Assembly: GCF_036365525.1 (NCBI RefSeq)
Contig: NW_027140807.1
Coordinates: 1,922,001-1,986,000 of the forward strand
Source of the DNA: Heterodontus francisci
Taxonomy: Eukaryota
Direction: 5' to 3'
Length of the DNA stretch: 64,000 bases
Part shown: positions 21,423-64,000 of the stretch, in pieces
Layout: each line of letters begins with the position of its first letter
Position numbering within the stretch: position 1 is the stretch's first letter
Position numbers and translations under genes: made by a program
Notes under the pieces: model-generated
Seen by the model: only the letters and a program-made list of their open reading frames with translations
Database searches by the model: none
Told to the model about the DNA's origin: nothing

Positions 21423-21461
21423 CACAGTGACTCAGAAAGGTGCCAGATTTCAGCAAAAACT
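21423..21461 (+). other. 23-RSS of V2
   Basis: CACAGTG - 23 bp - GCAAAAACT. Confidence 0.95.
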
Positions 21462-33424: not shown

Positions 33425-33894
33425 GCATGTCTCATTTTCTCTCACTCACTCTTTCTCCCTCTCTATTTTTCTGTCTTTATAACACGAATCTCTCTCTCTC
33501 TGTCTCTCTCTCACACACACTCCCACCTCTCCATTCATTTACCATTTCATGGTGTATCATTCTTAACACCTCTCTGCTCACTTTGTGTTTTCCAGATGTT
33601 GGAGCCGTGCTGATCCAACAGATTCCCCCTTCTATATCCCATTCCCCGGGATCTCCAGTCAGCATCGAGTGTATTTGCACTGAAGCAGCAGCTGACTCGT
33701 ATTTCTACTGGTACCGATGGCACCCTGACAGTGAGCCTCAGGACCTTTTCTATTCTAACTGCATCGACATGGTCACTCCCTCCGGTGAGGTGGACGGTTT
33801 CACCGCCAGGAGACCTGACAGCACTCACTTTTACCTGGAGTCCTCCGGCCTGTGGGAGAATCACTCAGCCGTGTATTAGTGTGCCTGGAGTTTA
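32994..33894 (+). pseudogene. TRBV: TCR beta V pseudogene V4 (paralog of V2) with a single TAG before the second Cys
   Basis: Leader 32994-33036 MTVSHLWVVLLVLR. V exon 33596-33894 ...IECIC...WYRWHP...AVY*CAWSL, with TAG at 33877-33879. Confidence 0.92.
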
Positions 33895-33933
33895 CACAGT
33901 GACTCAGAGAAATACAGCAGTTCAACAAAAACC
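33895..33933 (+). other. 23-RSS of V4 (perfect consensus)
   Basis: CACAGTG - 23 bp - ACAAAAACC. Confidence 0.97.
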
Positions 33934-44747: not shown

Positions 44748-45560
44748 TCAGTACTGAGGGAGTGCTGCATTGTTGGAGGGTCAGTACTGAGGGAGTGCTG
44801 CACTGTTGGAGAGTCAGTACTGAGGGAGTGCTGCACCATCAGATGGTCAGCACTGAGGGAGTGCTGCACTGTCCGAGGGTCAGTACTGAGGGAGTGCTGC
44901 ATGTCAGAGTGTCAGTACTGAGGGAGTGCTGCACTGTCAGAGGGTTAGTACTGAGGTAATGCTGCACTGTCAGAGGGTCAGTACTGAGGGAGCACTGCAC
45001 TGGCAGAGTGTCTGTACTGAGAGAGTGCTGCATGACAGAGTGTCTGTACTGAGGGATTGCAGCACTGTCAGAGGGTCAGTACTGAGGGAGTGCTGCTCTG
45101 TCACAGTGTCAGTACTGAGGGAGTGCTGCACTGTCAGAGTGTCAGTACTGAGAGAGTGCTGCACTGTCAGAGGGGCAGTACTGAGGGAGTGCTGCACTCT
45201 CAGATGGTCAGTACTGAGGGAGTGCTGCACTGTCAGTGGGTCAGTACTGAGGGAGTGCTGCACTGTCTGAGTGTCAGTACTGAGGGAGTGCTGCACTGTC
45301 AGAGTGTCAGTACTGAGAGAGTGCTGCACTGTCAGATGGTCAGTACTGAGGGAGTGCTGCACTGTCTGAGTGTCCGAACTGAGGGAGTGCTGCACTGTCA
45401 GAGGGTCAGTACTGAGGGAGTGCTGCACTGTCAGAGGGTCAGTACTGAGGGAGTGCTGCACTGTCAGAGGGTCAGTACTGAGGAAGTGATGCACTGTCCG
45501 AGGGTCAGTACTGTGGGAGTGCTGCACTCTCAGACGGTCAGTGCAGAGGGAGTGCTGAAT
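44748..45560. repeat. 33-bp SINE-derived tandem repeat
   Basis: Same unit as 11141-11405; 11-aa periodic ORFs. Confidence 0.95.
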
Positions 45561-46774
45561 TTGCACCTGAGATTTTAAACCAGCGACTGGTCTGCCTTCT
45601 CAGGTGAGACACACTATACCCCTTGGACTGTGTCCTGAGGCAAATCGCAAAGAAACATGCCATTCGGCCCAACACATGCATGCTGGCGTTCATCCTCCAC
45701 ACGAGCTTCCTCGCTCCCGTCTTCATCTCACCCCATCAGTAGATCCTTCCAAATCTCCCCCACCCCCATTTGTTTATCCAGATTCCCTCTTGAATACATC
45801 TCCGCTATTCACCTATCCAACTCCCTACTTCCTCCCACTCTCTGGGTAAAGAGGTTTCTCCTGAATTCCCGATGTTATTTATTAGTGACTATCTTTCTAT
45901 TGATGGTTCGGAGTTCCTGACTCCCCCACAAGTGAAAACATCTTTTGCACGTCAACCCTATCAAAAACTCTTTCATAATCTTAAATCCATCCATCAGATC
46001 ACCCTTCAGCCTTCTCTTTACAGCCCTTCCTGATAATTATAACCTCTCAGTTCTGATATCATCCTTGTCATTACTTTTTTGCCGCTTCTCCTGTATCTCT
46101 ATATCTCTTTAAAATGAATACCAGAACTGTGAAAAGTGCTCGAACTGTGGCCTAAGCTAGATTCAATACAAGTTTAACATGACTTCTCATCGCTCTATAA
46201 TGTCCAGGGAACATTTAGAAGCAGCAATAGATTCCTACTTTGTGCCATGTTTGCAAAAGGACAAAGGGAAATGTACTTACTTTGATGACTCCATAATCGC
46301 CTTTCTTTGAAAATGTTTTGTGTCCATATCCCAATCCTTCATTCAATGTCCGCCTTTATTGTTAGAAATTTTTTGAACCTCTTGAACCCAGAACCTCGCG
46401 TTACCTTCATCTGAAGAGCAAGCAGCATCAGAACCGAACAAAAGAGGAAAACCCTCAATGTTAGAGTTGAGGACCAGGTGCATGGGCGATGGCTGTTGGT
46501 GTGCAGACAGATCAGCTGAAATGATAACAGCACCGCAACAGAACACCTGGGAACTTGCACACCCCTGGTTTGGCAGACCTGGGACTCTCTCAGTGATAGG
46601 TGAAGAGATTGCAGTGTACACGATTTACTGTATACATTAAGTGTGTTCTGTTTGAGGACCCGTAGCCGGTGCTTCCTGAGATCCTGCAGGTTGTGGAGGG
46701 ACAATGCAGGTAAAGAAAAGGGTAAGGAACGGAGGCAGAGATTGGGATAAGGGGTGCAACAGAGGGAAGGAATT

Positions 46775-47119
46775 NNNNNNNNNNNNNNNNNNNNNNNNNN
46801 NNNNNNNNNNNNNNNNNNNNNNNNNNNNNNNNNNNNNNNNNNNNNNNNNNNNNNNNNNNNNNNNNNNNNNNNNNNNNNNNNNNNNNNNNNNNNNNNNNNN
46901 NNNNNNNNNNNNNNNNNNNNNNNNNNNNNNNNNNNNNNNNNNNNNNNNNNNNNNNNNNNNNNNNNNNNNNNNNNNNNNNNNNNNNNNNNNNNNNNNNNNN
47001 NNNNNNNNNNNNNNNNNNNNNNNNNNNNNNNNNNNNNNNNNNNNNNNNNNNNNNNNNNNNNNNNNNNNNNNNNNNNNNNNNNNNNNNNNNNNNNNNNNNN
47101 NNNNNNNNNNNNNNNNNNN
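46775..47119. other. Assembly gap (N run)
   Basis: Run of N. The paralogous position in unit 2 (about 56720-56850) is GA-rich low-complexity DNA. Confidence 1.
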
Positions 47120-47740
47120 GTCTTCCACCTGTTTCTGTGTAACAGACTGGAGAGGGGCTGAATGCCCTCTTCCTGTTCCTGTGGAACAGACTGGAGAGGG
47201 GCTGAATGTCCTCCTCCTGTTCCTGTGTAACAGACTGGAGAGGGGCTGAATGCCCTCCTCCTGTTCCTGTGTAGCAGGCTCTAGAGGGGCTGAATGTCCT
47301 GCTCCTATTCCTGTGCAACAGACTGGAGAGGGGCTGAATGTCCTCCTCCTGTTTCTGTGTAACAGACTGGAGAGGGACTGAATGTCCTCCTCCTGTTTCT
47401 GTGTAACAGACTGGAGAGGGGCTAAATGGCCTCCTCCTGTTCCTGTGAAACACAATGGAGAGGGGCTGAATGTCCTCCTCCTGTTCCTGTGTAGCAGGCT
47501 CTAGAGGGACTGAATGTCCTCCTCCTGTTCCTGCGTAACAGACTGGAGAGGGGCTGAATGCCCACCTCCTGTTCCTGTGTAGCAGGCTCTAGAGGGGCTG
47601 AATGTCCTCCTCCTGTTCCTGCGTAACAGACTGGAGAGGGGCTGAATGCCCTCCTCCTGTTCCTGTGTAGCAGGTTCTAGAGGGGCTGAATGTCCTCCTC
47701 CTGCGAATGTGAAACAGCTTTGAGAGGTTCTGAATGGCCT
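47120..47740. repeat. 44-bp tandem repeat derived from a CR1 3' tail (AGAGGGGCTGAATGTCCTCCTCCTGTTCCTGTGTAACAGACTGG)
   Basis: Period 44. Shorter versions occur at 56845-57030 and 5310-5490. Confidence 0.92.
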
Positions 47741-47855
47741 CGAATTGTGCTCCGAAGGTCTAAGTAAACTTCAGCACCTCAGTCTCAACTGCCGTCACCA
47801 GGTGAAACCCTCGGGAGCCGTTTAAGCGGATAGGAAATGTAAATTTCGTGTTCCG

Positions 47856-47935
47856 CTTTTTTGTATGAGTGTCTATCACCGTGGGGACAGCAGGGACACG
47901 GTGATAAAATCCAATGCAACCTCCGTACAAAAACC
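47856..47935 (+). CDS. TRBD: TCR beta D segment D1 (coding 47884-47896 GGGACAGCAGGGA) with 5' 12-RSS and 3' 23-RSS
   Basis: CTTTTTTGT-12-CACCGTG | D | CACGGTG-23-ACAAAAACC. Open in all 3 frames (GTAG/GQQG/DSR). Confidence 0.97.
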
Positions 47936-48418
47936 TCGTTCAACACACCTGGTGGAGGATCAGCAGAAGAGCAGTGACAACAGAGTAAAGGAGTCAACAT
48001 GGCCCTGGATTATGGCGGGAACAGGGCCGTTTTTATTATAAAGATGTCTCAGAATGGTCCAGCCTTATAACCTGGAATATTCCTCTGGAAAATAGAATAA
48101 CTGTGTCATTTGTGTGGAAACTGGTTACTCTTTAACCTTTAAACCCCACCCTGGTGTCCTGGGACCAATATTGATCCCTCAACCAACATCACAAAGAATG
48201 ATGTGCTCATTAATCTCATTGCTGTTTGATGGGACTTCCTTGGTACAATATCAGTTGCTGCGTCTCCCTGTGTGACTACTTCCTAAACAAACTGCTTCAT
48301 TGGCTGTAAGCTGCTTTCTGTGTCCTGATTGTCTTGACCAGTGCTTCCTAAATGCTGAGCAGGTCACTTTTAGCAATCAGTTTCTGACCGGGTTGATGTA
48401 ACGTGATCTGCTGACGTG

Positions 48419-48469
48419 CTACCAACACACCACTCAACTTCGGGACCGGCACCAAACTGACAGTGATAG
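48419..48469 (+). CDS. TRBJ: J1.1 TNTPLNFGTGTKLTVI
   Basis: GGTTGATGT-12-TGACGTG; FGxG; GTAAG donor. Confidence 0.9.
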
Positions 48470-48710
48470 GTAAGATAATGGGGCGTTTTTCCCCCACTCC
48501 CTTCATGTCCAGCTGTTTGTATTCCAAGCTTATTCCCCCCAACCCTCCGCGGGCGGTTTAAAAAGTCAGGCTGATGACACTGGCCCTTCTTTCTGGTTTG
48601 CAAAGACCAGTCCAATATGACCCTGGCCTCTAAACCACCCCGTCCTGTCTCGTTCAGTTACAAGGGGAACATCTCCCGGGTCTGTTCATGACTGAGTTTA
48701 GAGCATCGTG

Positions 48711-48758
48711 CAAAAGACATAGCTTACTTCGGCGATGGGACCAAGTTGACAGTTTTGG
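48711..48758 (+). CDS. TRBJ: J1.2 KDIAYFGDGTKLTVL
   Basis: TGTTCATGA-12-CATCGTG; GTAAG donor. Confidence 0.9.
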
Positions 48759-49391
48759 GTAAGGTGACTCTGTATTTCTGTTCCTCCTATCGATCAGAAT
48801 CTATATCTAGTTAAAAAATCACCAGGAGTAATGTTCAGATATGAGATACATTAAAGGGTTAACTCATGAGGACTGGTTACTCAGACTAAGCTGACAGTCC
48901 CTCGAATATAGAACATTAAGGGCTGATATAATGGAGGGGTTTGAGGTGTTGGATAGATAGAGAGAGAAACTGCTTTCTCACGTTGGGGAGTGTCCAGAAC
49001 AATTTAAATTATCACCTTTCAGGGGTGATATCAGGAAGCACTTCTTCACACAAAGGGTAGTGGAAATCAGGAACTCTCTCCCCCTCCTTCTCTCCCCAAA
49101 ACAATCTGTTGAGACTGGGGGTCAATTGATAAATTCAAATCCAAGATTGATCGACCTGTGTAAAACAAAAATATTGAGGGTTGCAGAACCAAGGAGGGAT
49201 GATGGAGTTAAGATTCAGATCAACCCTGAAATAACTGAATGGTGGAACAGGCTCGAAGGGCTGAATGGCCACCTCCTGTCCCCATGTTCCTACGACCTGT
49301 ACGGTCATTTACATAATAGGAACTTCAATGGAACAGAATTAACAATCTAAGGGGATTGGGGGGGATTTTGTGACAGCCCCATACCAGTGTG

Positions 49392-49441
49392 CTCCAATAC
49401 CGAAGAATATTTCGGAGATGGGACCAAACTGGTGGTTTTAG
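49392..49441 (+). CDS. TRBJ: J1.3 SNTEEYFGDGTKLVVL
   Basis: GGATTTTGT-13-CAGTGTG; GTGAG donor. Confidence 0.93.
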
Positions 49442-50951
49442 GTGAGTGAATGCATTCCTAATACTGGAAAAGTTGATTCAATTTGGTAATTCACGTGGGA
49501 TGGTCGAGGGGGTGAAAATGTAGAACTTTGGTGAATTAATTTCAATTCTTCAGCTTACAAGGGGAGACCTACAACTGCCGAATTCGTTTCACTGTAGGGA
49601 AGGGGTTTGAGTGGATACATAAGGGAGGGTCGCTAAAAGAAACAGAACAAACAGCAATGTAGATACAAATAGAATGATTGCGCTTGTGAGAGCAAAACAA
49701 GAGGACACAGACAAAGAACGAAAAATGTCAGATTGCATCGTTCAGTATGCAGTTCTGGTCTGCATATTATAAAATAAATGATGTAGAGGCTCTGGATAAG
49801 GTAAAACAAAACAGATTAACAGCTGTGCTGCCCAAACTGGGACGTTGTAACTATTGGGGAAGGTCGGACAGACTGGAACTCCTTTCTCGAGAGCAGTGAA
49901 GTTTGAGGGGTGACCTGGTCGAGGTCTGCACGATTTTGAAAGCGGTTTCGATAGGGTAGACACACCGAAGTTTTTTCCACTTGTGGGGAGACCAGAACGG
50001 GGGGGATCATAAATGTCAGATAGTCAGTAATAAATTCAATAGGGAATTCAGGAGAAATTTCTTTACCCAGACAGTGGTGCGAATGTGGAACTCACAACCA
50101 CAAGGAGTGGGTTTAAAAAAGTAGATTGGATAAAAAAAAAATGGATTAAATGAAGGGGATGAGAGGAGTCTCAATGGAGTGCAAACACTGGAATGGAGCA
50201 GATGGGCTGAATGGCCTGTTTGTGTGTTGTAAATTCTATGTAATTCTATATATTCCCTCTTGGCCTCGAGCAGCAATGGATGAAACCATTTTGAGACACA
50301 CTATTTTCAAGTTACTAATCGAACTGGTGAGCTATCCATATCCAGTGGACAATGAGGTGTCAAGGGCCCCATGAGCTTTCCTCATTCACCAGGATAATAC
50401 CGGTATTAAAAGAGTTTAATTTATGACGATGTGTTGTTTAAAGTAGGGTTGCAGTAAATTGAGAATTGGAGATTCAGGGGTGATCCAATTGATGTGTTTA
50501 AGATAATGATAGGATCTGATATTTCCTCTGGTGTGACGGGTCCAGAACAAGAGAGCAAAACCTTACACTGATAGCTAGACCATTCAGGAATGATGTCAAG
50601 AAGGACTTGTTTACAAAATGCCCTGTGGAATCCAGAAATCTCTCCCACAGAAAGCTGAGGGAGTCAGTCGAAAATTTCAAATGTGTGGTTGATGATTTTT
50701 TGATCGGCAAAGATGCTAAAGGTTATGGAACCAAGAAGGCAGGTCGAAGGCGTTAAGGTACAATTGATTTATAATCTAATTAAATGTCGGAATAAGCACG
50801 AAGGGCTGAATGGTCTACTCCTGTTCCCCAGTTGCTATGTTCCTTTGGACAAAATTTCCTTATACTTGTAGGTTCTCCCTTATTATGAGGGGCTCCTTTG
50901 GAAAAGGACTCAAAGACAGGTGATGTTTTAATACATGAGTTTATCATTGTG

Positions 50952-51001
50952 CTCTGGTGAGATTTATTATTTCGGAGCTGGGACGAAACTCACTGTTTTA
51001 G
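50952..51001 (+). CDS. TRBJ: J1.4 SGEIYYFGAGTKLTVL
   Basis: TGTTTTAAT-12-CATTGTG; GTAAG donor. Confidence 0.93.
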
Positions 51002-51212
51002 GTAAGATTATGTTTGCACATGTAGATATTTATATATGTAAACATCTATTTTCATCTGTAAGTCTTTCTATTTCTTTATCTATCAATGGACCTATCTATT
51101 TGTTGGTCTGTGGATCCATCTGTCTGTCTGTTTGTCCATCTACTTATCTATTTGTCTGTCCATACATCTGTCTACCCATCGTTGTATTTTGGTATTGTTG
51201 TTTAGTTCAGTG

Positions 51213-51269
51213 CGGGCGGGTATACCAACCTGCTACATTTTGGGGACGGGTCCACGTTGACGATTTTGG
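51213..51269 (+). CDS. TRBJ: J1.5 GGYTNLLHFGDGSTLTIL
   Basis: TATTTTGGT-12-TTCAGTG; GTGAG donor. Confidence 0.85.
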
Positions 51270-51613
51270 GTGAGTTCAGTTTCTTTGTTTTCAATGAAGC
51301 AAGGGTCACCTGTAAACATCTTGCAAGAAGGATTGAATGAATAATTGTGAGGGACTTAGAGAAAATCTCCTATTGTCAGGACTGCCACGGTGGATAACTG
51401 ACGAACAGGTCCACATAGAGACGGGGCAGACAGTCTTGGGAATTCTGAGAGCTATAACTGCAAACTGCCTGGTTAGTCCACGAGTTTACATTAACTTACA
51501 GTTAGCTTGCGTTAACCAGAGGCCACTATCAAATATTAAGGAATGGGGCAGTGAATTTCTTTTCTTCCAGAAGAGAGTTGGGGAATGTTTTTGTGTTGTG
51601 AGGTGATGATGTG

Positions 51614-51672
51614 GGAGCAGGGAGTATTCAGCCTTGTGTATTTTGGAGATGGCTCTAAATTAACAGTCCTGG
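51614..51672 (+). CDS. TRBJ: J1.6 EQGVFSLVYFGDGSKLTVL
   Basis: TGTTTTTGT-12-TGATGTG; 1 nt longer than its paralogs; GTAAG donor. Confidence 0.87.
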
Positions 51673-52412
51673 GTAAGTGAGATGTTCGTCAAAATATGTC
51701 TCTTACTAGCATTGCAAACGTCGACTAGTTTAGTCTCTTCAATTTAAAGAAAGGAGAGAGAATGTGAAAACAGGCAAAAGAGTAAGCATTGCATTGAAGA
51801 AGCAAGAATTTAAATAGCTAAATGTAGGAGATTGGAGGAGGGCTGGTGAGAGAGGAATTTACAACCAGAGATCATGGCTGATCTGATGTTGGCCTCGATC
51901 CCTCTTTCCTACCTGTTCTCCATAATCCTTGGCTCTGCTCTCTATCTCAGTTTGAATGCATTCACGGACTCAGCCTCCACAGCGCTGTGGAGTAGGGAAT
52001 TCCAAAGATTCACGACTCCCTGATCGAAGAAATTCCTCCTCCACTCCGTCCTAAATGAGCGACCCCTCATTCTGAAACTGCGCCCTTTAATTCTACAGGG
52101 GAACATCCTCTCAGCATTTACCCTGTCAAGCGCCCTCTGAATCTTAGAATTTCCCAGACCATCATCCCCCATTCTTCTTCACTCCAGATGGAGAGCAAAC
52201 ATCAGACAAAACTGGAGGGAGATGGGAAATTAGATTTAAAACAGTGAAAAAGAGACAGAGACAAGGAGATCAATTGTAACAGAATATAAGATAAAGAGCA
52301 ATAGGGTGGAATAATGAATATAACACAAGGCAAAATGTTCCAACTATGTTCATTAACTATTGTGTATCGAGTTAAAGAAACGCGAGTTCTGATACAAAAG
52401 TGTAACATTGCG

Positions 52413-52464
52413 TCAGGCAACGATGGTTATACTTTTGGGGGTAATTCAAAACTCATGGTTTTAG
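52413..52464 (+). pseudogene. TRBJ: J1.7 SGNDGYTFGGNSKLMVL (probable pseudo-J)
   Basis: Heptamer CATTGCG lacks the invariant GTG; FGGN in place of FGxG; paralog of the intact J2.7. Confidence 0.8.
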
Positions 52465-54696
52465 GTAAGTGAGATAGAATCGAATTAGCTCTTTAAAGGA
52501 AAGTGGAATCAGAGGGATGTCTAGTTGAAATTTAAAATTATTCAAACCTAGTTGTGGATATGAGGACCTTATATATAAACATACACCTTGTATTTGTGTT
52601 CCGGCTTCATGCATTACTTCCGAGCCCCATATGGAATATTTCCTGAAACAAACTAGAGACGTATTGTGCATGTGGAAATCGACATGTGATAAGTACCTTG
52701 GATATCAGAGGTTGAATGGCCTAATCCAGTCCCTAATGTAGCTAAATCGGCGTAATGCGAGTTGATGATAGGAGTGAGGTACAGGGACAAATACGTGACA
52801 ATCAAGAAATTTAGAATAAAGAGTTGAGGAAGCTGGAAAGTACCTTCGTTAAAGAAGGATTGACGAGGAGTTGAGCAAGGGAGTTAAGCTGAACCTCGAT
52901 GAATCGCTGGTTAGGTCCCAGCTGGAGAATTGTGGGTGTCACATGTTAGGATGGATGTCAAGGCCTTAGAGTGGTTGCACGAATGATTTATTCGACTGGT
53001 TCCAGCGATGAGGGTCTTCAGTTGCATCTAGAGACTAGAGCAGAGAAAGTTTAGGGGGGATTTGACAGAGGTGTCCAAAGCAATGAAGGCTTTGGACACA
53101 GTACATGCTCAGAAACAATTTCCAATGCTCGAAGCGTTGGTAAACAAAGGGCACAGAGTTGAGGTAATTGACAAAATAAACAGGGGTGATATGAAGAATA
53201 AAACAATTATGCGGTGTGTTGTTATCTGGAATGCGCTGCCTGAAAGGGTGGTGCAAACAGACTCAATAGTAACTTTCAAAAGGGGGACTGGACAATTACT
53301 TGAAGGGGAAATTATTTCTACTGGTGGATGGGTCAATAAACAAAGGTCAGATATTTAAAATCATTGACAAAAGATCTACAAGGACAATTACTAGATTCCT
53401 TTTCACTCAGAGTTGTCAGAATTTGGGACACTCTAACTGAAGCAGAATGCTGACTCTATGTTTAAATAGAAGTTACAGGAACATAGGATCATCGGTACAC
53501 AGGAGCAGGAGTAGTCCATTCGGCCCCTCGAGTCTGTTCTGCCAATCAATGCGATCATGACTGATCAGTGACCTAACTCCATCTACCCCCATAGCCCCAT
53601 AATCCCTTAATAGCTATGGTTAACAAAAATCTATCAATTTGAGATTTAAAATTGACAATTGTTCCAGCAGAAGAGAGTTCTAAACTTCTACCATCCTTTA
53701 TGTGAAAAGATGTTTTCTAATTTCATGCCTGAAAAGTTCTGGCTCTAATTCTTAAACTCTGTCCCGGAGATCTAGACTGCACAACCAATGGAGATCGTTT
53801 CTCTCCATCTACATCATGCATTCCCCTTAATATCTTGAAAACTTTGCTCAAACCACCCTTTAACCTTCTCTTTTCCAAAGAATAGGAAATGTCGAATCTT
53901 TCCTTGCAATTTAACCCTTGGCGTCCAAGAATCAGTCTGTTTAATCTACACTACACTTCCCCCAAGACCAGCATATCCTTCCTAATGTCTGGTGCCCATA
54001 AATGCTCAGAGGAACTCCAGATGTGGTGTAACCAGGGCTCTGTATAGCTGAAACACGACTTCTACTTCATTCTACCTATTAACTATTTTGCTTTACTCGT
54101 AACTGCTTTCTGAAATAGCCACGCAGTTGTCAAGGGCAACTAGGGATGGGTAACAAATGCTGGCCTTGTCATCGACGCCCACATCCCATGAAGGAGTTTT
54201 TTAAAAGCGCCTCAACCTCCTCCAGCACCCTACAACCCTCCCTATCCCTGTAACCTCCTCCAGTCCCTTACAACCCTCTCTATGTCTGTAACCACCTCCA
54301 GTCCCGACAACCCTCCCTATGTCTATAACTTCCTCCATGCCCCTACATCCCTCCCTATCTCTGTAACCTCTTCCAGCCCCGACAACCCTTCCTATCTCTG
54401 TAACCTCCTCCAGCCTCTACAACTCTCCGAGATCTTTGTGATCCTGAAATTCTGGACTGTCCGATTTCCATCAATCCACCATTGAGAGCTGTGCACTTAA
54501 CCACTCAGCTCTGCACCTTTCTTTCCATCCACCTTGACGATACGAAGATACATGATCCTTTTGCATGTCGGATCCTACTCGAAGGGCTGAACGGTCAATT
54601 TATGCTCTCGTGCTGCTGTCAGCCAATATTCCTGTACTTGTCGGTTCTCCATTGTTGTGAAAGGCTCTCTTGGGATAGAACCACAGAGAGTTGAGA

Positions 54697-54755
54697 GGTT
54701 TTATTCAGGGATCTAGGTTTTGCTCTGCTGAATCGGAACTGGATCTAAGTTTTAG
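54697..54755 (+). pseudogene. TRBJ: J1.8 deleted relic (paralog of J1.4/J2.4)
   Basis: Flanks align to J2.4. The heptamer and coding region carry deletions (…TCGGAACTGGATCTAAG…TTTTAG|GT). Confidence 0.75.
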
Positions 54756-54914
54756 GTAATATCCCATCTACATAAATGTGCAAATATCCATTGTTCGATC
54801 GATCCACAATGTATCTGTGCATCCATCTATGTGTTTAGATATAGATACATTACTTGTTTGAGACTGTACCTGTCTACCCAACGCTGTGTTTTGGTACTGT
54901 TGTTTAGTATAGTG

Positions 54915-54971
54915 TAGGCGGGAACATCCAGACTCTACATTTTGGGGAAGGCTGGACTCTAACAGTTTTGG
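54915..54971 (+). CDS. TRBJ: J1.9 GGNIQTLHFGEGWTLTVL
   Basis: TGTTTTGGT-12-TATAGTG; GTGAG donor. Confidence 0.85.
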
Positions 54972-55492
54972 GTGAGTTACATGTTTATTCGATTAAGCCA
55001 GGATGGCTGGTTTCATATTGCCTGTGTCATGCAGATGTTCTGTCCATGGCTCTGTGCTCCTTTTCTCCAGCAGGAGAGATGAGAATGACAAGGGAAAAAG
55101 GTAGGTAAGGCGGTTTCCCGTTACTTTCGTCAGAACAAGACGATAACTGAACCCCTGCTGTTGACCTTGCTCTGAATCACACGTGAGCCATCTAGCTAAC
55201 CAAACTAATCGGTCCCCATCCTGCATGCACAACTTACTTAATAATTATGACGAACTCCAAGTAAAATTTTCCAGTATTGTCAGAGCTGTATCTGTGGACA
55301 TCTGACTAACTGGTCCATACATTGATGGAGAGCCAGTATTGGGAATGTTTCGAGTTTTAATTGCCAACTACCCCGGTTAGTTTATGAGTTTACTTTGGCC
55401 AATGACACTCAAAGGCCCATATCAAATATTAATGATAGGGACAATGCAAATTAGCAGGACGCTATTGATGAATGTTGTGACATGGTGATGTG

Positions 55493-55550
55493 GGAGCAGG
55501 AAGTAACCATCCATCATATTTTGTAGATGCCACGAAGTTAACGGTCCTGG
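55493..55550 (+). pseudogene. TRBJ: J1.10 GAGSNHPSYFVDATKLTVL (pseudo-J)
   Basis: FVDA in place of FGxG; nonamer deleted relative to J1.6/J2.6. Confidence 0.82.
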
Positions 55551-57142
55551 GTGAGTAGAATATTGGTCGAAGTATATCAGTGGGCTCAATCAGCACTGAA
55601 ACTGTTGGGCAGTTTGCTCCCTTCCGTTTGAAGAAAGGGGAGAGAACATGAAATTTGGAAAAATAAACAGTAAGCATTGCAGTAAAGAAGCAAAGGTTAA
55701 AACAATTAAACATAGAGGAAAGGCGAGGTGGAGAGTGGAAGAAAACTAGGGAGGCAACCATATGCAGAGAGGCACAGATTGGGAGCAAAATACAGACAAA
55801 AATGAACAGGAAAAGTCATTGTTAATTCGTGCTGGGATGCATTTATTGGCCACCCATAATTGCCTTCTGAGTGGTTTGTTAGGCCATGTTTTTATTCTTG
55901 TCATGGGATGTGGGCACCGATGGCAAGGCTAACATTTGTTGCCCATCCCTAATTGCCCTTGAACTGAGTGCTTTGCAATTTCAGAGGGCAGTTAACAGTC
56001 AACTGCATGCTGCAGGTATGGAGTCCCAGATAAGATGGTAGATGGGTTTTTATGACAATCGACGACAGTTTCATGGCACCCTGACAGATTTTTATGAATC
56101 AGCTGAATTTAAATCCCATCTGCGGCCATTTGAATTCACACAACCAGAACACTAGCCCGGGCTGCAGGATTACTAGCCCAGCAACATTATCATTTTGCTG
56201 GCGTCACGCCTGCGTTCAATGTGGTTTAGGTATTTCCACAGTGTTGTTAAGGAAAGAGTTCCTTTTTTGACCCATTTTCTCAGAGGGCGGATTATTCATT
56301 TTCAAACATTGCTCGAATCCCCCCAGAAATGTGTCATCAAGCCAGTGGTGATACTGAACATGAGCCTCCTCTCCCCCCCCACTACACCATCTAAACTTCT
56401 ATTCCTTTCTCCCTCATGTCAGGTGCATGGCGATGGGGGTTGGTGTGCAATGAGATCTGCAGGAATGATAACAGCACCGCGCACATCAACACGACACCTG
56501 GGAAACTTGCACTAGTTTGGCAGACATGGGTCTCTCTGAGTGATAAGATAAGAGATAGCAGTGTGAACGATTTACTGTCTAGAGTAAGTGGCTTCTGTTT
56601 GAGGTCCCGTGGCCGGTATGTCCTGAGGTCCTGCACGTTGTAGAAGAGAGAATGCAGATCATGAAGCGGGTAAGGGATGGGGGAGGGGGAAGGGGAGAAG
56701 GGGTGCAACAGAGAGATGGAATGGAGAGAGAGAAAGAAAGAGAGAAAGCAAGCAAGAAAAAAACCATGAAAGGAAGGAAGGGAGGAAGGATGGAAGGACG
56801 GAAAGAAAGGAAGGAAGGAAGTAGAGGAAAGGAAGGAGGCTTGAGTGGATGAATGGGCCTGTTACTGTGTAAGCAGCTCAAGAGGGGCTGAATGGGCCTC
56901 CTCTTCTTCCTGTGTAACAAGGTCTAGAGGGGCTGAATGGTCTCTTGCTGCACCTGTGTAGCAGGCTGTGAAGGGGCGGAATGGCCACCTCCTGTTCCTG
57001 CTAACAGTTTTGAGACGGAATGAACGGCCTATAATTCTGGTCCAAAGGACTAAAAAACTTTCAGCAGCTCAATCTCAACTGACTTCACCAAGTGAAGCCC
57101 TCGGGAGTCTTTTCAGAGGCAGGGCCTTGCAAAATTCGCGTT

Positions 57143-57222
57143 CTTTTTTGTATGAGTGTCTATCACCGTGGGGACAGGGGGGACACTGTGATAGAATCCA
57201 ATGCAGCCTCCGTACAAAAACC
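57143..57222 (+). CDS. TRBD: TCR beta D segment D2 (coding 57171-57183 GGGACAGGGGGGA) with 5' 12-RSS and 3' 23-RSS
   Basis: CTTTTTTGT-12-CACCGTG | D | CACTGTG-23-ACAAAAACC. The GGGACAGGGGG core is the vertebrate TRBD1 signature. Confidence 0.97.
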
Positions 57223-57704
57223 TCGCTCTACACACCTCGAGGAAGATCAGCAGAAGAGCAGTGGCAACAGAGTAAACGAATAAACATCTCCTCTGGATTA
57301 TGGCGGGAGCTGGGCCCTTTCAATCTTGTAGATGCCTCAGAATGGTCCAGCTTTATAACCTAGAGCATTCCTCTGGAAAAGAGAATAACTGTGTTATTTG
57401 TGTGAAAACTGGTTACTCTTCAACCCCTGAAACACCACCCCGGTGTCTTGGGACCAATATTGATCCCTCAACCAACATCACAATGATCTGCTCATTAATC
57501 TCACTGCTGTTTGATGGGACTTCCTTGGTACAATATCAGTTGCTCTGTCTCCCTGTGGTGACCACTTCCTAAACAAACTGCTTCATTGGCTGTAAGCTGC
57601 TTTGTGCCTCCTGATTGTCTTGACCAGTGCTTCCTAAACGCTGAGCAGCCCACTTGTAGCAAACCGTTTTCGACCGGGTTGATGTAACATGATTTGCTGA
57701 TGTG

Positions 57705-57755
57705 CCCAGACAGCACCACACAATTTCGGGACCGGCACCAAACTGACGGTGTTAG
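57705..57755 (+). CDS. TRBJ: J2.1 QTAPHNFGTGTKLTVL
   Basis: GGTTGATGT-12-TGATGTG; GTAAG donor. Confidence 0.9.
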
Positions 57756-58136
57756 GTAAGATAATGGGGTCTTTTGTTCTCTCTACCTTCATGTGTAGCT
57801 GTGTGCATTCACAGCTTACTGCACCCCCTCCCCCACCACCCCCCCCCCCCCCCCCAACCCCGGACAGTTTAACGAGTTAGTCAGTCGGTTAGATCTGTCT
57901 CATGACCGCAGAGAATTGCGCCTAATTTCCCTCCTGCCACAAGCGTCCGTATGTCACTTTGGCGCGGTATTTCTCTCCCCGGGACGACACTGGCCCTTCC
58001 TTCTGGTTCGCAAAGACCAGTCCAACGGGACACCCGCTTGGTGATGTGTTCCACGGTAAACCGCCCGGCACAGACCCGTTCAGCTGCAAGGGTAACAGTT
58101 CCCGGGCCAGTTCATGACTGGGTTTAGGCCACTGTG

Positions 58137-58184
58137 CAGGAAACATAGCTTACTTCGGCGACGGGACCAAGTTAACAGTTTTCG
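58137..58184 (+). CDS. TRBJ: J2.2 GNIAYFGDGTKLTVF
   Basis: AGTTCATGA-12-CACTGTG; GTAAG donor. Confidence 0.92.
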
Positions 58185-58774
58185 GTAAGGGACTCTGTTC
58201 TTCCTATCAGATCAACATCGAGGTCTATATGCGGTTAAAAAATCGCGGGGAGTAAGTTCAGATATTAGATGCAGAAAGGGGTTAAATCATGAGGACTGGT
58301 TACTCAGACTAAGCTGACAGTCCCTTGAACCTAGATCATTAAGGGTTGATATAATCGAGGTGCTTGAGGTGTTGGATAGAAAGAGAGAAACTGCTTCTTC
58401 AGGTTGGGGGAAATCCAGAACAATTTAAATTCGAGCCGTTCAGGGGTGAGATCAGGAACTCTCCCCGAACCCCCCACAACAAATAAAATACTGTTGAGGC
58501 TGGGGGTCAATTGATAAGTTCAAATCCAAGATTGTTTGATTTTTGTTAAACAGAAGTATTGAGGTTTACAGAAGCAAGGTGGGATGATGGAGTTAAGGTT
58601 CAGAACAACCCTGATCTAACTGAATGGTGGAACAGGTACGAAGGGCTGAATGGCCACCTCCTGTCCCCATGTTCCAACGACCTTTACAGGCCATTGACAC
58701 AGTCAGAACTTCAATGGAACAGACTTAACAATCTAGACTTGAGGGGGATTTTGCGACAGCCCCATACCATTGTG

Positions 58775-58824
58775 TAATGCTGGAGAAGCATATTTCGGAG
58801 ATGGGACCAAACTGGTGGTTTTAG
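58775..58824 (+). CDS. TRBJ: J2.3 NAGEAYFGDGTKLVVL
   Basis: GGATTTTGC-13-CATTGTG; GTGAG donor. Confidence 0.93.
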
Positions 58825-60364
58825 GTGAGTGAATGCATTCCTAATGCTGGAAAAGTTGATTCAATTTGGGAATTCACGTGGGGTGGTCGAGGGAGTGAAA
58901 ATATGGGAATTTGGTGAATTAATTTCGACTCTTGAGCTTACAAAGGGAGACCTACAACTGCTGAATTCATGTCACTGGATGGAAAGGGGTTTGAGTGGAA
59001 CATAAGGGAGGGTCTCTAAAATAAACAGTGCAAACGGCAATTGTAGCTGCAAATGAGAGCAGAACAAGAGGACACAGACACAGAACGAAAACTGTCAGAT
59101 TCAGTTCTTTAGTATGCCGTTCTGTTCTGCATATGATTAAAAAAGCAGAGGCACTGGATAGAGCAAAACAAAACATATTTACAAGTGAGCTCCCAAAACT
59201 GAGAGAATATAACTACAGATAAAGAATGAAGAGGCTGGTGCTGTTTTCTCTAGAAAAGAGAAGGCAGAGAGGATAACCTGATCGAGGTCTTTATGATTAT
59301 GACAGAGGCAAGATGATTCTACTTGTTGGGGAGACCAGAACCAGGGGACCATCAATATAAGACAGTCACTAATAAATCCAATATGGAATTCAGGAGAAGC
59401 CTTTTCAACCAGAGAGTGGCAAGAATGTGGAATTCACTACCACAGGGAGTGGGCTGAGGCAAATAGCAGAGATGTTTTTAAGAGGGAAGCTGGATAAACA
59501 TATGGGGGAGAAAGGAATAAAAGGACCTATTGATGGGGTGAGATGAAGAGGGTGTGAGAAGGATAATGTGGAGCATTTAATCGGCTAGGATGTAGTGGGC
59601 CGAATGGCCTGGTTCGGTGCTGAAGTGTCGATATGATTTGATGTATTCCCCATTAACCTGAAGCGTTTGAATGGATGAGAAATATCAAAAGGGATTTTTA
59701 AAATTTGTGAATGGAGACTGGGTGGAGAATGCACATTGAACGGCCTGGGGAACGTGAGCTGAAAGTCCAGGGCAGATTGCGAATGATCTTTCCTCATTTA
59801 CCAGAATCATGCCGGAATTAAATTGTGGGGGCAGGTTGCTTAGAGATGTTGAGCATTGGAGATTAAGGATTGATCCAACTGATGTGTTTAAGATAATGAG
59901 AGGATTCGATCGGGTAGATAGAGCTGCAATTTACACGGGTGTCAGAGCCCAGAACAAGGGTGAGGGTGGAGAGGAGCATTAGCTTAACATCAAAGCTTGG
60001 CCGTTCAGGGGTGATGCCAGAAAGGACATAACTGAACAAACGGTGGTGGAAATCTGGGCCTCTCTCCCCTATGAAACTGCTGAGGCCACAGGGTCAATTG
60101 TCACTTCCCAATCTGAGAATGATAGAGCCTTGTTAGGAAAAGGGTCTGGAACACAAACAGGCTAATGGGGTTACAATACAGATGATTCATGACCTCACTG
60201 AATGTCAGAACAAGCTCGACGGGCTGAATGGCCTACTCCAGCTACAGTATTTCTATGTTCCTTTGTGCCAATACTCCTGTAGGTTCTTTCTAGTTGTGAA
60301 AGGCTCCTTCAGGACAAGAATCAGAGAGAGGTGAGAGGTTTTGATGCAGGGATTTAGCTTTGTG

Positions 60365-60414
60365 CTCTTCTGATATTTACTACTTCGGAGCTGGTACCAA
60401 GTTAACTGTTTTAG
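60365..60414 (+). CDS. TRBJ: J2.4 SSDIYYFGAGTKLTVL
   Basis: GGTTTTGAT-12-CTTTGTG; GTACGT donor. Confidence 0.92.
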
Positions 60415-60569
60415 GTACGTTACCATCTATATAAACATCTATTGTTCCATCATCCACAATGTATCGGTCTGTGTATCCATCTTTATGTTTATCGATCTAC
60501 GTAGCTACTTTTCTGTCGGTGTATCGGTCTATCCAAAGGTGTGTTTTGGTAATGTTGTTCAGCATAGTG

Positions 60570-60626
60570 CAGGCGGGAGCGACCAGCCTTTACATTTTGG
60601 AGAACGTTCGGCTCTAACAGTATTGG
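60570..60626 (+). CDS. TRBJ: J2.5 GGSDQPLHFGERSALTVL (non-canonical FGER)
   Basis: TGTTTTGGT-12-CATAGTG; GTGAG donor; second Gly replaced by Arg. Confidence 0.8.
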
Positions 60627-61176
60627 GTGAGTTAGACCTTCATTCAATGAAGCCAGGGATGCTGGGTTCATCTTGTCTGTGCAGGCTGGTGGTCATCTGA
60701 TGTACTGGCTCTCTGCTCCTTTTCTCCAGCAGGAGAGAGGAGCATGAATGTGGAGCAGTGTCTATGAGGAGGCTTCCCCTTGCCTTCCCCAGACATGGTG
60801 AGAAATGAACCCGTTCTGTAAGCATTGTTCTAACTGGCACGTTAGCCAACTGAGCTATCTGGTCCCCAACTTGTGTGTAGAAGTTAATTAATAATTATGA
60901 ACAACTCCATGTAAAATCTTCCAGTATTATAAGCACTGTATCTGTGGACATCTAACATATTCACAGATGGATGGATAGACGGTACTGTGAATGTTGCTGG
61001 CTTTAATGGTCAGGCCCCCTCTCCCCCACCTCCCCACCCGGTTATTTTATGCGTGTACTTTGTTGTATGGTCAGCTCATGTTAGTCAAAGGGCAATATCA
61101 AATATTAATGAGATGGACACTGAAAACTGGCAGGGCGCTATTGAGGAATGTTTTCGTGTTGTCACATGATGATGTG

Positions 61177-61234
61177 GGTGCAGGAAATACCCAGCTATCA
61201 TATTTTGGAGACGGCACTAAGTTAACACTCCTGG
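61177..61234 (+). CDS. TRBJ: J2.6 GAGNTQLSYFGDGTKLTLL
   Basis: TGTTTTCGT-12-TGATGTG; GTGAG donor. Confidence 0.92.
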
Positions 61235-61667
61235 GTGAGTGAGATATTTGTTGAAACATATCAGTGGTCTCAGTAATTATTAAAACTGTCGGCCAGTTTG
61301 TCCCCATCAGTTTGAAGAAAGGGGAGAGACCATAAACTTTAGAAAAAAACAAAGAGTAACGAAGCAACAGTTAAAACAACTGAACATAGGGCAATGGCGA
61401 GGTGGAAATGGAGGAAGGTTAGGGAGGCAAACCTTATCTACAGAGAGACAGATTGGGAGCAAAATGCAGGGAAAAGGGGACGGAAAATTAGAGAGACAAA
61501 GATGGGAGAGGTCGAGACAAAGACAAAAGAAATAACAAAAAGAGGTAAAGAGGGAAAGGGCGGGGTAACAAATGCAACCCAATACAAAACGATGCAACTG
61601 CGCTTAATTAACCGGCGTGTAGAGAGTTAAAGATTCCCTAGCTTTGTTACAACTGTGTAACATTGTG

Positions 61668-61719
61668 TCAGGGAACAATGACTATACATTTGGCGATGGC
61701 ACAAACCTCGTGGTTTTAG
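61668..61719 (+). CDS. TRBJ: J2.7 SGNNDYTFGDGTNLVVL
   Basis: AGCTTTGTT-12-CATTGTG; GTAACT donor. Confidence 0.92.
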
Positions 61720-62765
61720 GTAACTGATTAACGTGGCGTCAGTGAGAATCATTCCGCACGGTCTGATATGGTATAGTCTGATTGAAATTTACAAGATTAA
61801 TATATGAAGATAACACTAATCATATTCCCTATTCAGCTGCATCCGTTTCTTAACAATGACCGATTGTGTGTGTGGAAATCAACAAGTGATAGCTGTCTGG
61901 GAAATCAGACTCTGAATGGCCTACCCCTGTCCCGAATGTAACTCTATTGGTTTAATGCGAGGAGTGAGATAGAGAGTGAGCTTGGTCAAAAAAAGGGTCA
62001 AGATGTTTGAAGTGACCAGTTGATGATGCTGGAACGCACCATTATTGGTTAAGAATTCACGAGGTGTTGAGTGAGGAAGTGAGGATTAACATTTACAAAT
62101 CACTGGTAAGGTCCCAGCTGGAGTATTGTGTTCAGTCCTGGGTACCACACTTTATGACAGTTGTCGAGGCCTTAGATTGGGAGCAGAAATGATTCACCAG
62201 AATTGTACCAGAGATGAGGGACCTCAGATAGTTGGAGAGACTGGAGAACAGAAAAGGTTAAATGGAGATTGAATAGAGGTGTTCAAATTAGTGAAGGTTT
62301 TGGATAGAATTAATAATCAGAAACAGTCTCCATTGGTAGATGGGTCGGTAACCAGAGGACACAGGTTTTGAGGCAATTGACATAAAGGACCAGTGGCGGG
62401 ATGAAGAGACATTCTCCCACAGAGGTAGTTACTGGATCGGGAAGGCATATCTGAACTGGTGGTGGAAGTTGGTTCAGTAGAAACTTTCAAAATGGAAATT
62501 GATAGATACTCGAAGGGAAATATACAGGACGATGGTAAAACCTTTCATAAAGCCAGCAGAGGTCCTATGGGCCGAATGGTCTCCCCTTCAGTGATGGATA
62601 TTTCTGATTCTATGACCTTGCTCGTGAGCCACAAATGTAAATTAGGAGATATATAAACTAAGGAGATGTGATCTACAAACGCTTTCGAGGACAGGGTCCA
62701 AGTGTGATATAGACAAGACCTGCACCTCGCCTTGTGAGGTTTTGTTACAAGGGTCTCTCACTGTG

Positions 62766-62815
62766 TTCTGGCAATCAATATTACTTCGGAAGCGGTACCA
62801 AGTTAGTTGTGACAG
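62766..62815 (+). CDS. TRBJ: J2.8 SGNQYYFGSGTKLVVT
   Basis: GGTTTTGTT-12-CACTGTG; GTGAG donor. Confidence 0.94.
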
Positions 62816-63117
62816 GTGAGTCCAGGAATGTTAGGCCAATTCTGAGAATGCATGTTGTCTGAAATGGTCGGAAAGATGTTTAAGGCTCCGGGTTCATTGG
62901 TGAAAGACATTTTTCCAATGCATTTAAGATACAAACAGAGACAGAGAGAGAGAGAAGGAGAAAGACTGATTCTTGAACTGGATATGTGTTTAAAGAAGGG
63001 AAAATTTCTCCCATTTAGCTTACTATGGACAAACAAACAAGAGCTGTATTATTCACTCAAATATTCGGCAACTTTTCAGGGACCAGTCTAGTTTAGTAAC
63101 AGGGCTGAAACACTGTG

Positions 63118-63170
63118 TTCTGGAAGCTACGACTATTTCTTTGGTGACGGGACAAAACTGACTGTGTTGG
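63118..63170 (+). CDS. TRBJ: J2.9 SGSYDYFFGDGTKLTVL
   Basis: Perfect CACTGTG heptamer, weak nonamer; GTGAG donor. Confidence 0.92.
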
Positions 63171-64000
63171 GTGAGTTGGACGTTCTTTGAAAAACAATGA
63201 TTGCAGCTCACGCTGTTTCTGAGTTTCAGTTTGCAACTGAAATGTTGCATTGACAAGTAACAAAAAAATTTCAGGCAGCATTTCCAATGTGCATAAAAGC
63301 CAGAATACATGGAAAATACTAAGATGCACAGGGAAAGACATTTTTTTAATTCGTTCGTGGCATGTGGACCAGAATTTATTGCCCATCCCTAATTGCCCTC
63401 TGAGTGGTTTGCGAGTTCATTTTTTTTCATCAGATATGGGCGTCGCTGGCAAGGCCAAGATTTGTTGGCCAACCCTAATTGCTCTTGGACTGGGTGGTTT
63501 GATGTTTCAGAAGGCAGTTGCGAGTCAACTGAAGTCTGAAGTCACTTCTCTGACAACAGGCGGGATTTTCTGACAATTGACGATAGTTTCATGCAGTTAA
63601 ACCAGACTTTCATTTATCAGTTGAAGTTTAATTCCTCTAGCTACCCTCGGGATTTGAACCAGAACATTACTAGCACAGTAACATTATCACTTTGCAACCA
63701 TCGCCCCTGCACTCAATGGGGTGTAGGTCTTTCCGCAGTCCTGTCAGGGAGGCAGTAGCAGATTTATTAACCGTTTTCTCAGAGGGCAGATTATTTGTTT
63801 CCAAAAAATGCTGTCATCGTTCTTCCCCCAGAATGAGTGAAATAAAACATCATAATTACATTTAATTATATAGAATTTACAGTGTGTAAGCAAACCAGTG
63901 GTGAAACTGCACACGAGCCTCCTCTCACCCTTACTTCATCCAATCTTCTATTCCTTTCTCTCCCATGTCTTTTTCCAACTCACTCCTTGAAAGCATCTCC

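What the first reader, a model, noticed from the sequence alone, without database searches (positions are those of the whole stretch)
46476..63969. Tandem D-J/D-J duplication with no intervening constant region
Seen: unit 1 (46476-56420) and unit 2 (56421-63969) are paralogous. The junction ...CCCTCATGTC|AGGTGCATGG... fuses sequence found after the last J (63969) to sequence found upstream of D1 (46476), and no C exon lies between J1.10 and D2. Known: mammalian TRB repeats whole D-J-C cassettes. Inference: both clusters share one downstream C. The RSSs allow D1-J2, D1-D2 (V-D-D-J, longer CDR3) and secondary V-to-D2J2 replacement of a failed VD1J1 join. J1 transcripts must splice across the whole D2-J2 region.
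Basis: partly seen in the sequence, partly recalled or inferred. Interest (0 to 1): 0.85.

Follow-up and report, generated by a model that had tools for sequence, protein, structure and literature searches.

The report
Shark TCR-beta D-J cluster duplicated without C
In a shark T-cell-receptor beta locus the block holding one D segment and its J segments was copied in tandem long ago without a constant gene between the copies, a layout not found in the papers searched, though it probably works much like the known two-cluster loci.

Summary
Unit 1 (46476-56420) and unit 2 (56421-63969) are colinear paralogs, 73-84% identical. The junction joins the homolog of the unit-2 tail directly to the homolog of the unit-1 head.

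Each unit has an intact D (12-RSS / 13 nt / 23-RSS) followed by J segments. Cluster 1 has 10 J, of which 7 look usable and 3 are dead. Cluster 2 has 9 J, of which 8 are canonical.

No constant exon lies between the clusters:
- J1.10 and D2 are only 1.6 kb apart, most of it homologous to the unit-2 tail and unit-1 head.
- 106 ORF pieces gave no Ig-domain hit, while V exons scored 1e-16 by the same method.
- The first 24 nt of the C exon, read from RNA, are absent from the window.

Independent DNA and RNA contigs bridge the junction. RNA contigs show J2.1 and J2.3 spliced to the same exon, which lies outside the window.

Not shown: that J1 segments are used, or that they splice to that same C. 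The one usable J1 in the stretch examined (J1.9) had almost no RNA cover.

The N gap abuts a minisatellite, lies between colinear blocks, and touches no segment.

Verdict: a real, old, probably functional new variant of a known locus type. Interest is moderate.

The parts
46476..56420 (+). Unit 1: head, N gap, 44-bp minisatellite, D1, ten J segments, tail
   Evidence: Colinear blastn blocks against unit 2 at 73-84% identity
56421..63969 (+). Unit 2: head, short minisatellite, D2, nine J segments, tail
56420..56421 (+). Duplication junction: tail homolog fused to head homolog, 1 nt microhomology. The 3' breakpoint lies inside an interspersed-repeat copy that continues past 63969 in unit 2.
   Evidence: Alignment. 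Bridged by a 1265-nt DNA contig (X3 record 2) and a 934-nt RNA contig (X5 record 10). Many genomic loose ends at 56396-56419.
46775..47119 (.). Assembly gap (N) between colinear blocks, directly abutting the minisatellite. Not filled.
47120..47703 (+). 44-bp minisatellite, 13.3 copies, upstream of D1. About 3 copies lie upstream of D2 at 56858-57000.
   Evidence: TRF and blastn. No match to the CTCF core consensus at 2 mismatches or fewer.
47856..47935 (+). D1 with RSSs: 12-RSS 47856-47883, coding 47884-47896 (GGGACAGCAGGGA), 23-RSS 47897-47935
   Evidence: RSS scan. The 5' RSS is 28/28 identical to that of D2.
57143..57222 (+). D2 with RSSs: 12-RSS 57143-57170, coding 57171-57183 (GGGACAGGGGGGA), 23-RSS 57184-57222
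   Evidence: The core matches the teleost TRBD GGGACAGGGGGC quoted in PMC8656973. Seen in germline form inside an RNA contig.
48391..51672 (+). J1.1-J1.6. Coding: 48419-48469, 48711-48758, 49392-49441, 50952-51001, 51213-51269, 51614-51672. All have a 12-RSS, FGXG, an open frame and a GT donor.
52385..52464 (+). J1.7, probably dead: heptamer CATTGCG, FGGN in place of FGXG
54700..54758 (+). J1.8 relic, J4-like, with 12-nt and 7-nt deletions that remove the heptamer and part of the coding sequence
   Evidence: Alignment
54887..54971 (+). J1.9 (FGEGWTLTVL). Intact by sequence, but almost no RNA contig cover.
   Evidence: X5 depth 0.15 in bin 54850-55049.
55465..55550 (+). J1.10, probably dead: FVDA in place of FGXG, nonamer 2/9
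57677..63170 (+). J2.1-J2.9. Coding: 57705-57755, 58137-58184, 58775-58824, 60365-60414, 60570-60626 (FGER), 61177-61234, 61668-61719, 62766-62815, 63118-63170.
   Evidence: The J2.1 and J2.3 donors carry the same spliced-on sequence in RNA contigs.
54639..55814 (+). Extra J4-J6-like block inside unit 1. It is closer to J2.4-J2.6 than to unit 1's own J1.4-J1.6.
   Evidence: JC distances of 0.22-0.37 against 0.36-0.59; blastn

Best explanation
This is a real, ancient tandem duplication of a TCR-beta D-J cluster that never included a constant gene. It gives the layout V...-D1-(J1 x10)-D2-(J2 x9)-[C outside the window].

Shown:
- The two units are colinear paralogs joined at a clean non-homologous breakpoint.
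- Both D segments keep intact 12/23 RSS pairs.
- 7 of 10 J1 and 8 of 9 J2 keep RSS, open frame, FGXG and a splice donor.
- No C exon lies between the clusters.
- J2.1 and J2.3 are spliced in RNA to one and the same exon, which begins G|CGAAAACGATACG... and continues the J frame as ..L-G-E-N-D-T-I-R-P. That exon is not in the window.

Inferred:
- The C sits downstream of unit 2 and serves both clusters.
- A V-D1-J1 join is transcribed through the remaining J1 segments and the whole D2-J2 cluster, at least 8.4-15.5 kb. The J1 donor then splices to the C acceptor, as upstream TRAJ or IGHJ segments splice over unrearranged downstream J segments.
- D1 can join either J set and D2 only J2. D1-D2-J2 joins are allowed, and so is a second V-to-D2J2 attempt that deletes a failed V-D1-J1.
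For: - Colinear homology and junction.
- D and J anatomy.
- Constraint on the D signals: the D 5' RSS is 28/28 identical and the 3' RSS 36/39. Over the D RSSs and the J1.1-J1.3 segments together, identity is 87% with no gaps. The background is 81.1% identical with 242 gap columns (Fisher p = 0.009). Background JC distance is about 0.22, so the copies are old yet both keep working signals.
- No C between the clusters: Pfam on 10 and then 106 stop-to-stop ORF pieces of 30 aa or more, on both strands of 52.47-57.14 kb plus the unit-2 tail, gave no Ig, C1-set or V-set hit. The same procedure gave V-set at 1.2e-16 for the window's V exons.
- The 24-nt C-exon start has 0 matches in the window at up to 3 mismatches.
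- J1.10 and D2 are 1.6 kb apart, most of it tail and head homology.
- Reads: a DNA contig and an RNA contig bridge the junction. They differ from the window by about 1-2%, so they come from another allele or copy. Loose ends are identical behind 57756 and 58825. RNA depth peaks at J2.1 (1407) and J2.3 (2455).
Against: - The C gene itself was not seen, because the window ends 31 nt after unit 2.
- No direct evidence that any J1 is used. J1.9 had depth 0.15 in the RNA run, and J1.1-J1.6 lay outside the single 6-kb stretch that could be laid.
- Three of ten J1 are dead against none clearly dead in J2, which hints at weaker selection on cluster 1.
- The RNA and DNA contigs are 95-99% alike, not identical. 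Some could come from paralogous TRB cassettes elsewhere in this genome, so expression is not strictly assigned to this copy.
- TRB identity rests on the D core, the J motifs and the RSS geometry. The V exon search against solved structures was not discriminating.
Confidence: 0.68

Rival explanations
1. The duplication is real, but cluster 1 is a little-used or decaying appendage. Most receptors are built from D2-J2, perhaps with D1 joining J2, and the J1 segments are drifting to pseudogenes.
For: - 3 of 10 J1 are dead, against only one non-canonical J2.
- J1.9 has almost no RNA contig cover, while J2.1 and J2.3 reach depths of 1400-2450.
- RNA depth steps up from about 6-7 at 55.1-55.9 kb to about 73-105 from 56.3 kb onward.
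Against: - The D1 RSSs are essentially perfect after about 20% background divergence.
- Seven J1 still have RSS, frame, FGXG and donor.
- J usage within cluster 2 is also very uneven: J2.2 at 71 and J2.5 at 27, against J2.3 at 2455. One silent J1 therefore proves little.
- The RNA run held 0.35 of the sampled words of 48301-58300 against 0.60 for the DNA runs. That suggests it covers more of the stretch than 55-58.3 kb alone, which is a weak inference.
Confidence: 0.2
2. The locus was once D1-J1-C1-D2-J2-C2, as in mammals, and C1 was later deleted.
For: Whole D-J-C duplication is the rule in the described TRB loci.
Against: - The unit-1 tail stays colinear with the unit-2 tail right up to the breakpoint and is then followed at once by the first base of head homology.
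- A later deletion would have to end exactly at the old duplication boundary.
- No C relic was found.
Confidence: 0.07
3. The layout is an assembly artefact: a false join of two cassettes, or a haplotype duplicated in tandem.
For: - The genome holds several TRB cassettes (earlier notes).
- An N gap lies in unit 1.
- The contigs laid are from one sample only.
Against: - The units differ by about 20%, far beyond allelic divergence, so this is neither a collapse nor a haplotig.
- There is no N at the junction.
- There is no shared sequence at the breakpoint that could mislead an overlap assembler.
- Separately assembled DNA and RNA contigs with 1-2% differences bridge it.
Confidence: 0.04

Closest known systems
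Mammalian, axolotl and newt TRB: tandem D-J-C clusters (2 in human and mouse, 3 in ruminants, pig and camel, 5-6 in urodeles)
   Same: - One D with a 12-RSS on the 5' side and a 23-RSS on the 3' side, followed by its own set of J segments.
- Clusters in tandem downstream of the V segments.
- The upstream D can reach the downstream J set, and there is a second chance via D2-J2.
- D1-D2 joins are reported in humans.
   Different: In those loci every cluster carries its own C. Here the duplicated unit stops about 0.8 kb after the last J, and cluster 1 has no C.
Duck, zebrafish, catfish and minifish TRB: V-D-(J)n-C1-(J)n-C2
   Same: These are also partial-cassette duplications, showing that the TRB D-J-C unit need not duplicate as a whole.
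   Different: They are the mirror image: J-C is duplicated without D. Here D-J is duplicated without C.
TRA, IGH and IGK J-C introns
   Same: A join to an upstream J is spliced to C across all unrearranged downstream J segments (established knowledge). This is the mechanism proposed for J1.
   Different: Those introns hold only J segments. Here the intron would also hold a complete, recombination-competent D with both RSSs and probably its own germline transcription.
TRD and IGH multi-D loci (V-D-D-J joins)
   Same: Two D segments in one transcription unit, with RSSs that allow D-D joining.
   Different: In those loci the D segments lie together upstream of one J cluster. Here they are interleaved with J clusters, so D2 cannot use J1.

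Membership tests
TCR-beta (TRB) D-J region | D segment flanked by a 5' 12-RSS and a 3' 23-RSS | tested here: met
   Both D1 and D2. The 3' nonamers are perfect ACAAAAACC.
TCR-beta (TRB) D-J region | G-rich TRBD core GGGACAGGGGG, conserved across vertebrates | tested here: met
   D2 is GGGACAGGGGGGA and D1 is GGGACAGCAGGGA. The catfish and zebrafish TRBD is GGGACAGGGGGC (PMC8656973).
TCR-beta (TRB) D-J region | J segments with a 12-RSS, an FGXG motif and a 3' splice donor in phase 1 | tested here: met
   15 of 19 J segments meet all three.
TCR-beta (TRB) D-J region | Upstream V segments with 23-RSS | tested here: met
   Heptamers at 21423, 23344, 33895, 35455 and 38516, each with a 23-bp spacer. 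V-set at 1.2e-16.
TCR-beta (TRB) D-J region | J segments spliced to a C-beta gene | tested here: inconclusive
   J2.1 and J2.3 are spliced to one exon whose first 24 nt read ..GENDTIRP. That is too short to identify as C-beta, and the exon lies outside the window.
Mammalian-type D-J-C cassette duplication | Each D-J cluster is followed by its own C gene | tested here: not met
   No Ig-domain ORF piece and no C-exon start between J1.10 and D2. The interval is 1.6 kb, most of it tail and head homology.
   Shown for two J2 segments only. J1.9 has no RNA cover, and J1.1-J1.6 were not in the stretch laid.
   The window ends at 64000, and neighbouring sequence could not be read.

The most novel reading that the evidence does not exclude
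D1-J1-D2-J2-C is the standard, old architecture of shark TRB cassettes rather than a one-off. Both clusters would feed one C, and D1-D2 tandem joins would contribute a class of long CDR3-beta loops. This would fit the wide nurse-shark CDR3-beta range of 0-19 residues quoted in PMC5278385. It would be a third way, besides D-J-C and J-C duplication, in which vertebrates expanded TRB junctional diversity.
Probability: 0.25. Interest if true: 0.6.

Novelty: new variant of a known kind. Interest (0 to 1): 0.4.

Why it matters
Every TRB locus in the papers I could search expands the D-J-C region in one of two ways. Either the whole D-J-C unit is copied, or J-C is copied behind a single D. A D-J copy with no C is the missing third form.

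It matters in three ways:
- It shows that in a cartilaginous fish the unit of duplication can be the recombination substrate alone.
- It puts a complete D, with both RSSs and apparently its own transcription, inside what must be the J1-C intron.
- It gives a simple system for asking how cluster choice, D-D joining and secondary V-to-DJ replacement are controlled when the clusters are not separated by a constant gene and its regulatory elements.

The practical consequences for the repertoire are probably modest, because mammals reach the same outcomes with D-J-C pairs.

Tried and rejected
- Automatic J annotation by best-scoring heptamer failed. I replaced it with donor-anchored reading by eye and a scripted check.
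- A first relaxed peptide regex for J segments mostly found the minisatellite.
- The V exon search against solved structures gave mostly antibody and scFv chains. It does not separate V-beta from other V domains.
- The CTCF core consensus gave 7 hits at 2 mismatches or fewer, which is chance level. None fell in the 44-bp minisatellites, so I do not call them CTCF arrays here.
- Pfam on ORF pieces of 45 aa or more in 40.0-44.7 kb found no monooxygenase domain. The 'ghost MOXD' note is not supported by this crude test.
- NAHR between flanking repeats as the duplication mechanism is rejected. There is no homology between 46300-46475 and 56250-56420.
- Findings look-ups for the stretch downstream of the window, and by sequence, returned nothing usable.
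- Literature: no paper on shark TRB genomic organisation was found in the library. The string D-J-D-J-C occurs in 0 papers. PMC3222143 is not held. The statement in the catfish paper that minifish has eight TRBD is contradicted by the minifish paper itself, which gives one D and eight J.
Full report
**What is there.** The window is a shark T-cell-receptor beta-type locus. Earlier notes of this scan call the animal horn shark; I did not verify the species.

V segments with 23-bp-spacer RSSs lie at 21-39 kb, and one inverted V lies near 18.2 kb. Their exons score V-set at 1.2e-16.

Two D segments follow:
- D1, 47884-47896, GGGACAGCAGGGA.
- D2, 57171-57183, GGGACAGGGGGGA.

Each has a 12-RSS upstream and a 23-RSS downstream with a perfect ACAAAAACC nonamer. 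The D2 core is the conserved TRBD sequence. Catfish and zebrafish TRBD is GGGACAGGGGGC (PMC8656973).

**J segments.** An nhmmer profile, donor-anchored reading and a scripted check give ten J after D1 and nine after D2.
- Cluster 1: J1.1-J1.6 and J1.9 have a 12-RSS, an open frame, FGXG and a GT donor in phase 1.
- J1.7 has heptamer CATTGCG and FGGN.
- The J4-like relic at about 54700-54758 has 12-nt and 7-nt deletions.
- J1.10 reads FVDA and its nonamer is 2/9. These three are probably dead.
- Cluster 2: all nine are intact, and only J2.5 (FGER) departs from FGXG.

**The duplication.** blastn of the two units gives one colinear chain at 73-84% identity, running from 46476/56421 to 56420/63969.

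The three-way alignment fixes the junction. Sequence up to 56420 aligns with sequence up to 63969, and sequence from 56421 aligns with sequence from 46476. Neither alignment continues across the breakpoint. One C is shared, so the join was non-homologous.

Positions 56396-56419 belong to an interspersed repeat, shown by many genomic loose ends. In unit 2 this repeat runs on past 63969. By eye, 18 of 30 positions of the loose-end consensus match 63970-64000. In unit 1 the repeat is cut at the junction, as expected if the 3' breakpoint of the duplication fell inside that repeat copy.

**The N gap.** The gap at 46775-47119 lies between two blocks that match unit 2 in the same order and orientation. 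It abuts a 44-bp minisatellite (47120-47703, 13.3 copies). The matching place in unit 2 is about 135 bp of simple repeat. No segment or frame is affected. Only the length of unit 1 and the repeat copy number are uncertain. I did not fill it.

**Unit 1 is not a plain copy.** The block 54639-55814 (J1.8 relic, J1.9, J1.10) is a second J4-J6 set.
- It is closer to J2.4-J2.6 (JC 0.22-0.37) than unit 1's own J1.4-J1.6 is to either (0.36-0.59).
- Unit 1 has no counterpart of J2.8 or J2.9.
- 53176-54639 is unit-1-specific repeat-rich sequence.

At least two further events, such as a block duplication or unequal exchange plus a deletion, followed or preceded the main duplication. I cannot order them.

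**Age and constraint.** In the best-aligned 2.5 kb, background identity is 81.1% with 242 gap columns (JC about 0.22).
- The D 5' RSS is 28/28 identical and the 3' RSS 36/39.
- The RSS and coding features together are 87% identical with no gaps (Fisher p = 0.009).

The copies are therefore old, and the recombination signals of both have been kept. Gene conversion could also contribute to this.

**No constant exon between the clusters.**
- The J1.10 donor (55551) and the D2 12-RSS (57143) are 1.6 kb apart. Most of that interval is tail and head homology plus simple repeats.
- Pfam on the ten largest ORFs, and then on all 106 stop-to-stop ORF pieces of 30 aa or more, gave no Ig-type hit. The pieces covered both strands of 52.47-57.14 kb plus the unit-2 tail. 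The same procedure found the V exons.
- The first 24 nt of the exon that J2 segments splice to has no match in the whole window at up to three mismatches.

**Reads.** One run search and one lay were allowed. The lay covered 54650-60649.
- All runs come from one sample, and their contigs differ from the window by about 1-4%. They represent another allele, another individual or a close paralog, not the assembled haplotype.
- DNA contig X3 record 2 (1265 nt) covers 55978-57236. Contig X5 record 10 (934 nt) covers 56307-57237. Both bridge the junction.
- X5 behaves as RNA from lymphoid tissue. It holds 0.35 of the stretch's words with only 160 M letters. Its depth peaks on J2.1 (1407) and J2.3 (2455), where two sister runs have about 0.
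- Behind the donors at 57756 and 58825, X5 carries the same loose end, CGAAAACGATACGATTAGG. In the J frame this reads ..L-G-E-N-D-T-I-R-P.
- A contig of run X7 holds 41 nt of J2.3 coding sequence flanked on both sides by foreign sequence, as a rearranged VDJ-C message would.
- X5 record 10 contains D2 with both RSSs, so unrearranged D2 is transcribed or DNA is present in the run. Depth rises from about 6-7 at 55.1-55.9 kb to about 73-105 from 56.3 kb. This is compatible with a start of germline transcription upstream of D2, but contigs cannot show starts.
- J1.9 had depth 0.15.

**What is shown and what is inferred.**
- Shown: the duplication, its junction, the intact D and J anatomy, the absence of a C between the clusters, and the splicing of J2 segments to a common exon outside the window.
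- Inferred: that this exon is C-beta exon 1 lying downstream of unit 2, that J1 segments are used, and that they reach the same C by splicing across D2-J2.

The mechanism poses no difficulty. J segments have no acceptor sites, and upstream TRAJ or IGHJ segments routinely splice over unrearranged downstream ones (established knowledge). The 12/23 rule permits D1-J1, D1-J2, D1-D2 and V-D2 joins.

D1-D2 joins and replacement of a V-D1-J1 join by V-to-D2J2 are also possible in mammalian loci (PMC10513440 abstract). They are therefore not special to this layout.

**Comparison with the literature.**
- Mammals, axolotl and newts duplicate whole D-J-C units, and salmonids duplicate whole V-D-J-C loci.
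- Duck, zebrafish, catfish and minifish have one D followed by J-C, J-C.
- I found no description of D-J, D-J, C in TRB, and no paper on shark TRB genomic organisation, in the searchable library. Subscription-journal papers are not covered, so this absence is weak evidence.
- An unverified first-reader note of this scan (s1-871857) reports 'V-D1-Jx9-D2-Jx18-C' on another piece of the same genome. If it is right, the layout is shared by several cassettes and was found before by this scan on other DNA.

**Verdict.** This is a new variant of a known kind of locus, of moderate interest (0.4). The most useful follow-ups are to read the sequence downstream of 64000 and to score J1 usage in RNA.

Noticed in passing
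47120-47703 and 56858-57000: A 44-bp minisatellite lies upstream of both D segments, with 13.3 copies before D1 (abutting the N gap) and about 3 before D2. Earlier notes call similar repeats elsewhere CTCF arrays. Here the core consensus CCASYAGRKGGCRSY has no match in them at 2 mismatches or fewer.
   Followed up: partly
48068-48368 (unit 2: about 57350-57650): The D-to-first-J interval is 87-92% identical between units, above the 81% background and above the J segments themselves. It may be a conserved regulatory element.
   Followed up: no
56307-57237: One RNA contig runs from the unit-1 tail across the junction and through unrearranged D2 with both RSSs. RNA depth is about 10-fold higher from 56.3 kb onward than at 55.1-55.9 kb. 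This may be germline D2 transcription.
   Followed up: partly
54639-55814: A second J4-J6 block in unit 1 is closer to unit 2's J2.4-J2.6 than to unit 1's own J1.4-J1.6. This implies an extra block duplication, an unequal exchange or gene conversion.
   Followed up: partly
44748-45557: A 33-bp tandem repeat with 24.6 copies at 88% match lies between the last V and unit 1.
   Followed up: no
33614-33894: The V segment with a perfect 23-RSS (heptamer at 33895) has TAG in place of the Tyr codon before the conserved Cys (TATTAGTGTGCC). It is probably a pseudogene.
   Followed up: no
18187-18700 (- strand): An inverted V with an open frame ends in ..LYFCAWSL and has a 23-RSS, upstream of the forward V segments.
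   Followed up: no
Short or decayed exons would escape this test.
   Followed up: partly
54650-60649: DNA and RNA contigs of the only available sample differ from the window by about 1-4%. The RNA contig over J2.2 carries 8 variants that the DNA contig lacks. These are alleles or near-identical paralogous cassettes.
   Followed up: no
53032-53355 and 61863-62386: An ORF fragment beginning RLEQRKFRGDLTEV... is shared by both units. From memory it resembles a retroelement tail common in fish genomes. No Pfam match was found.
   Followed up: no
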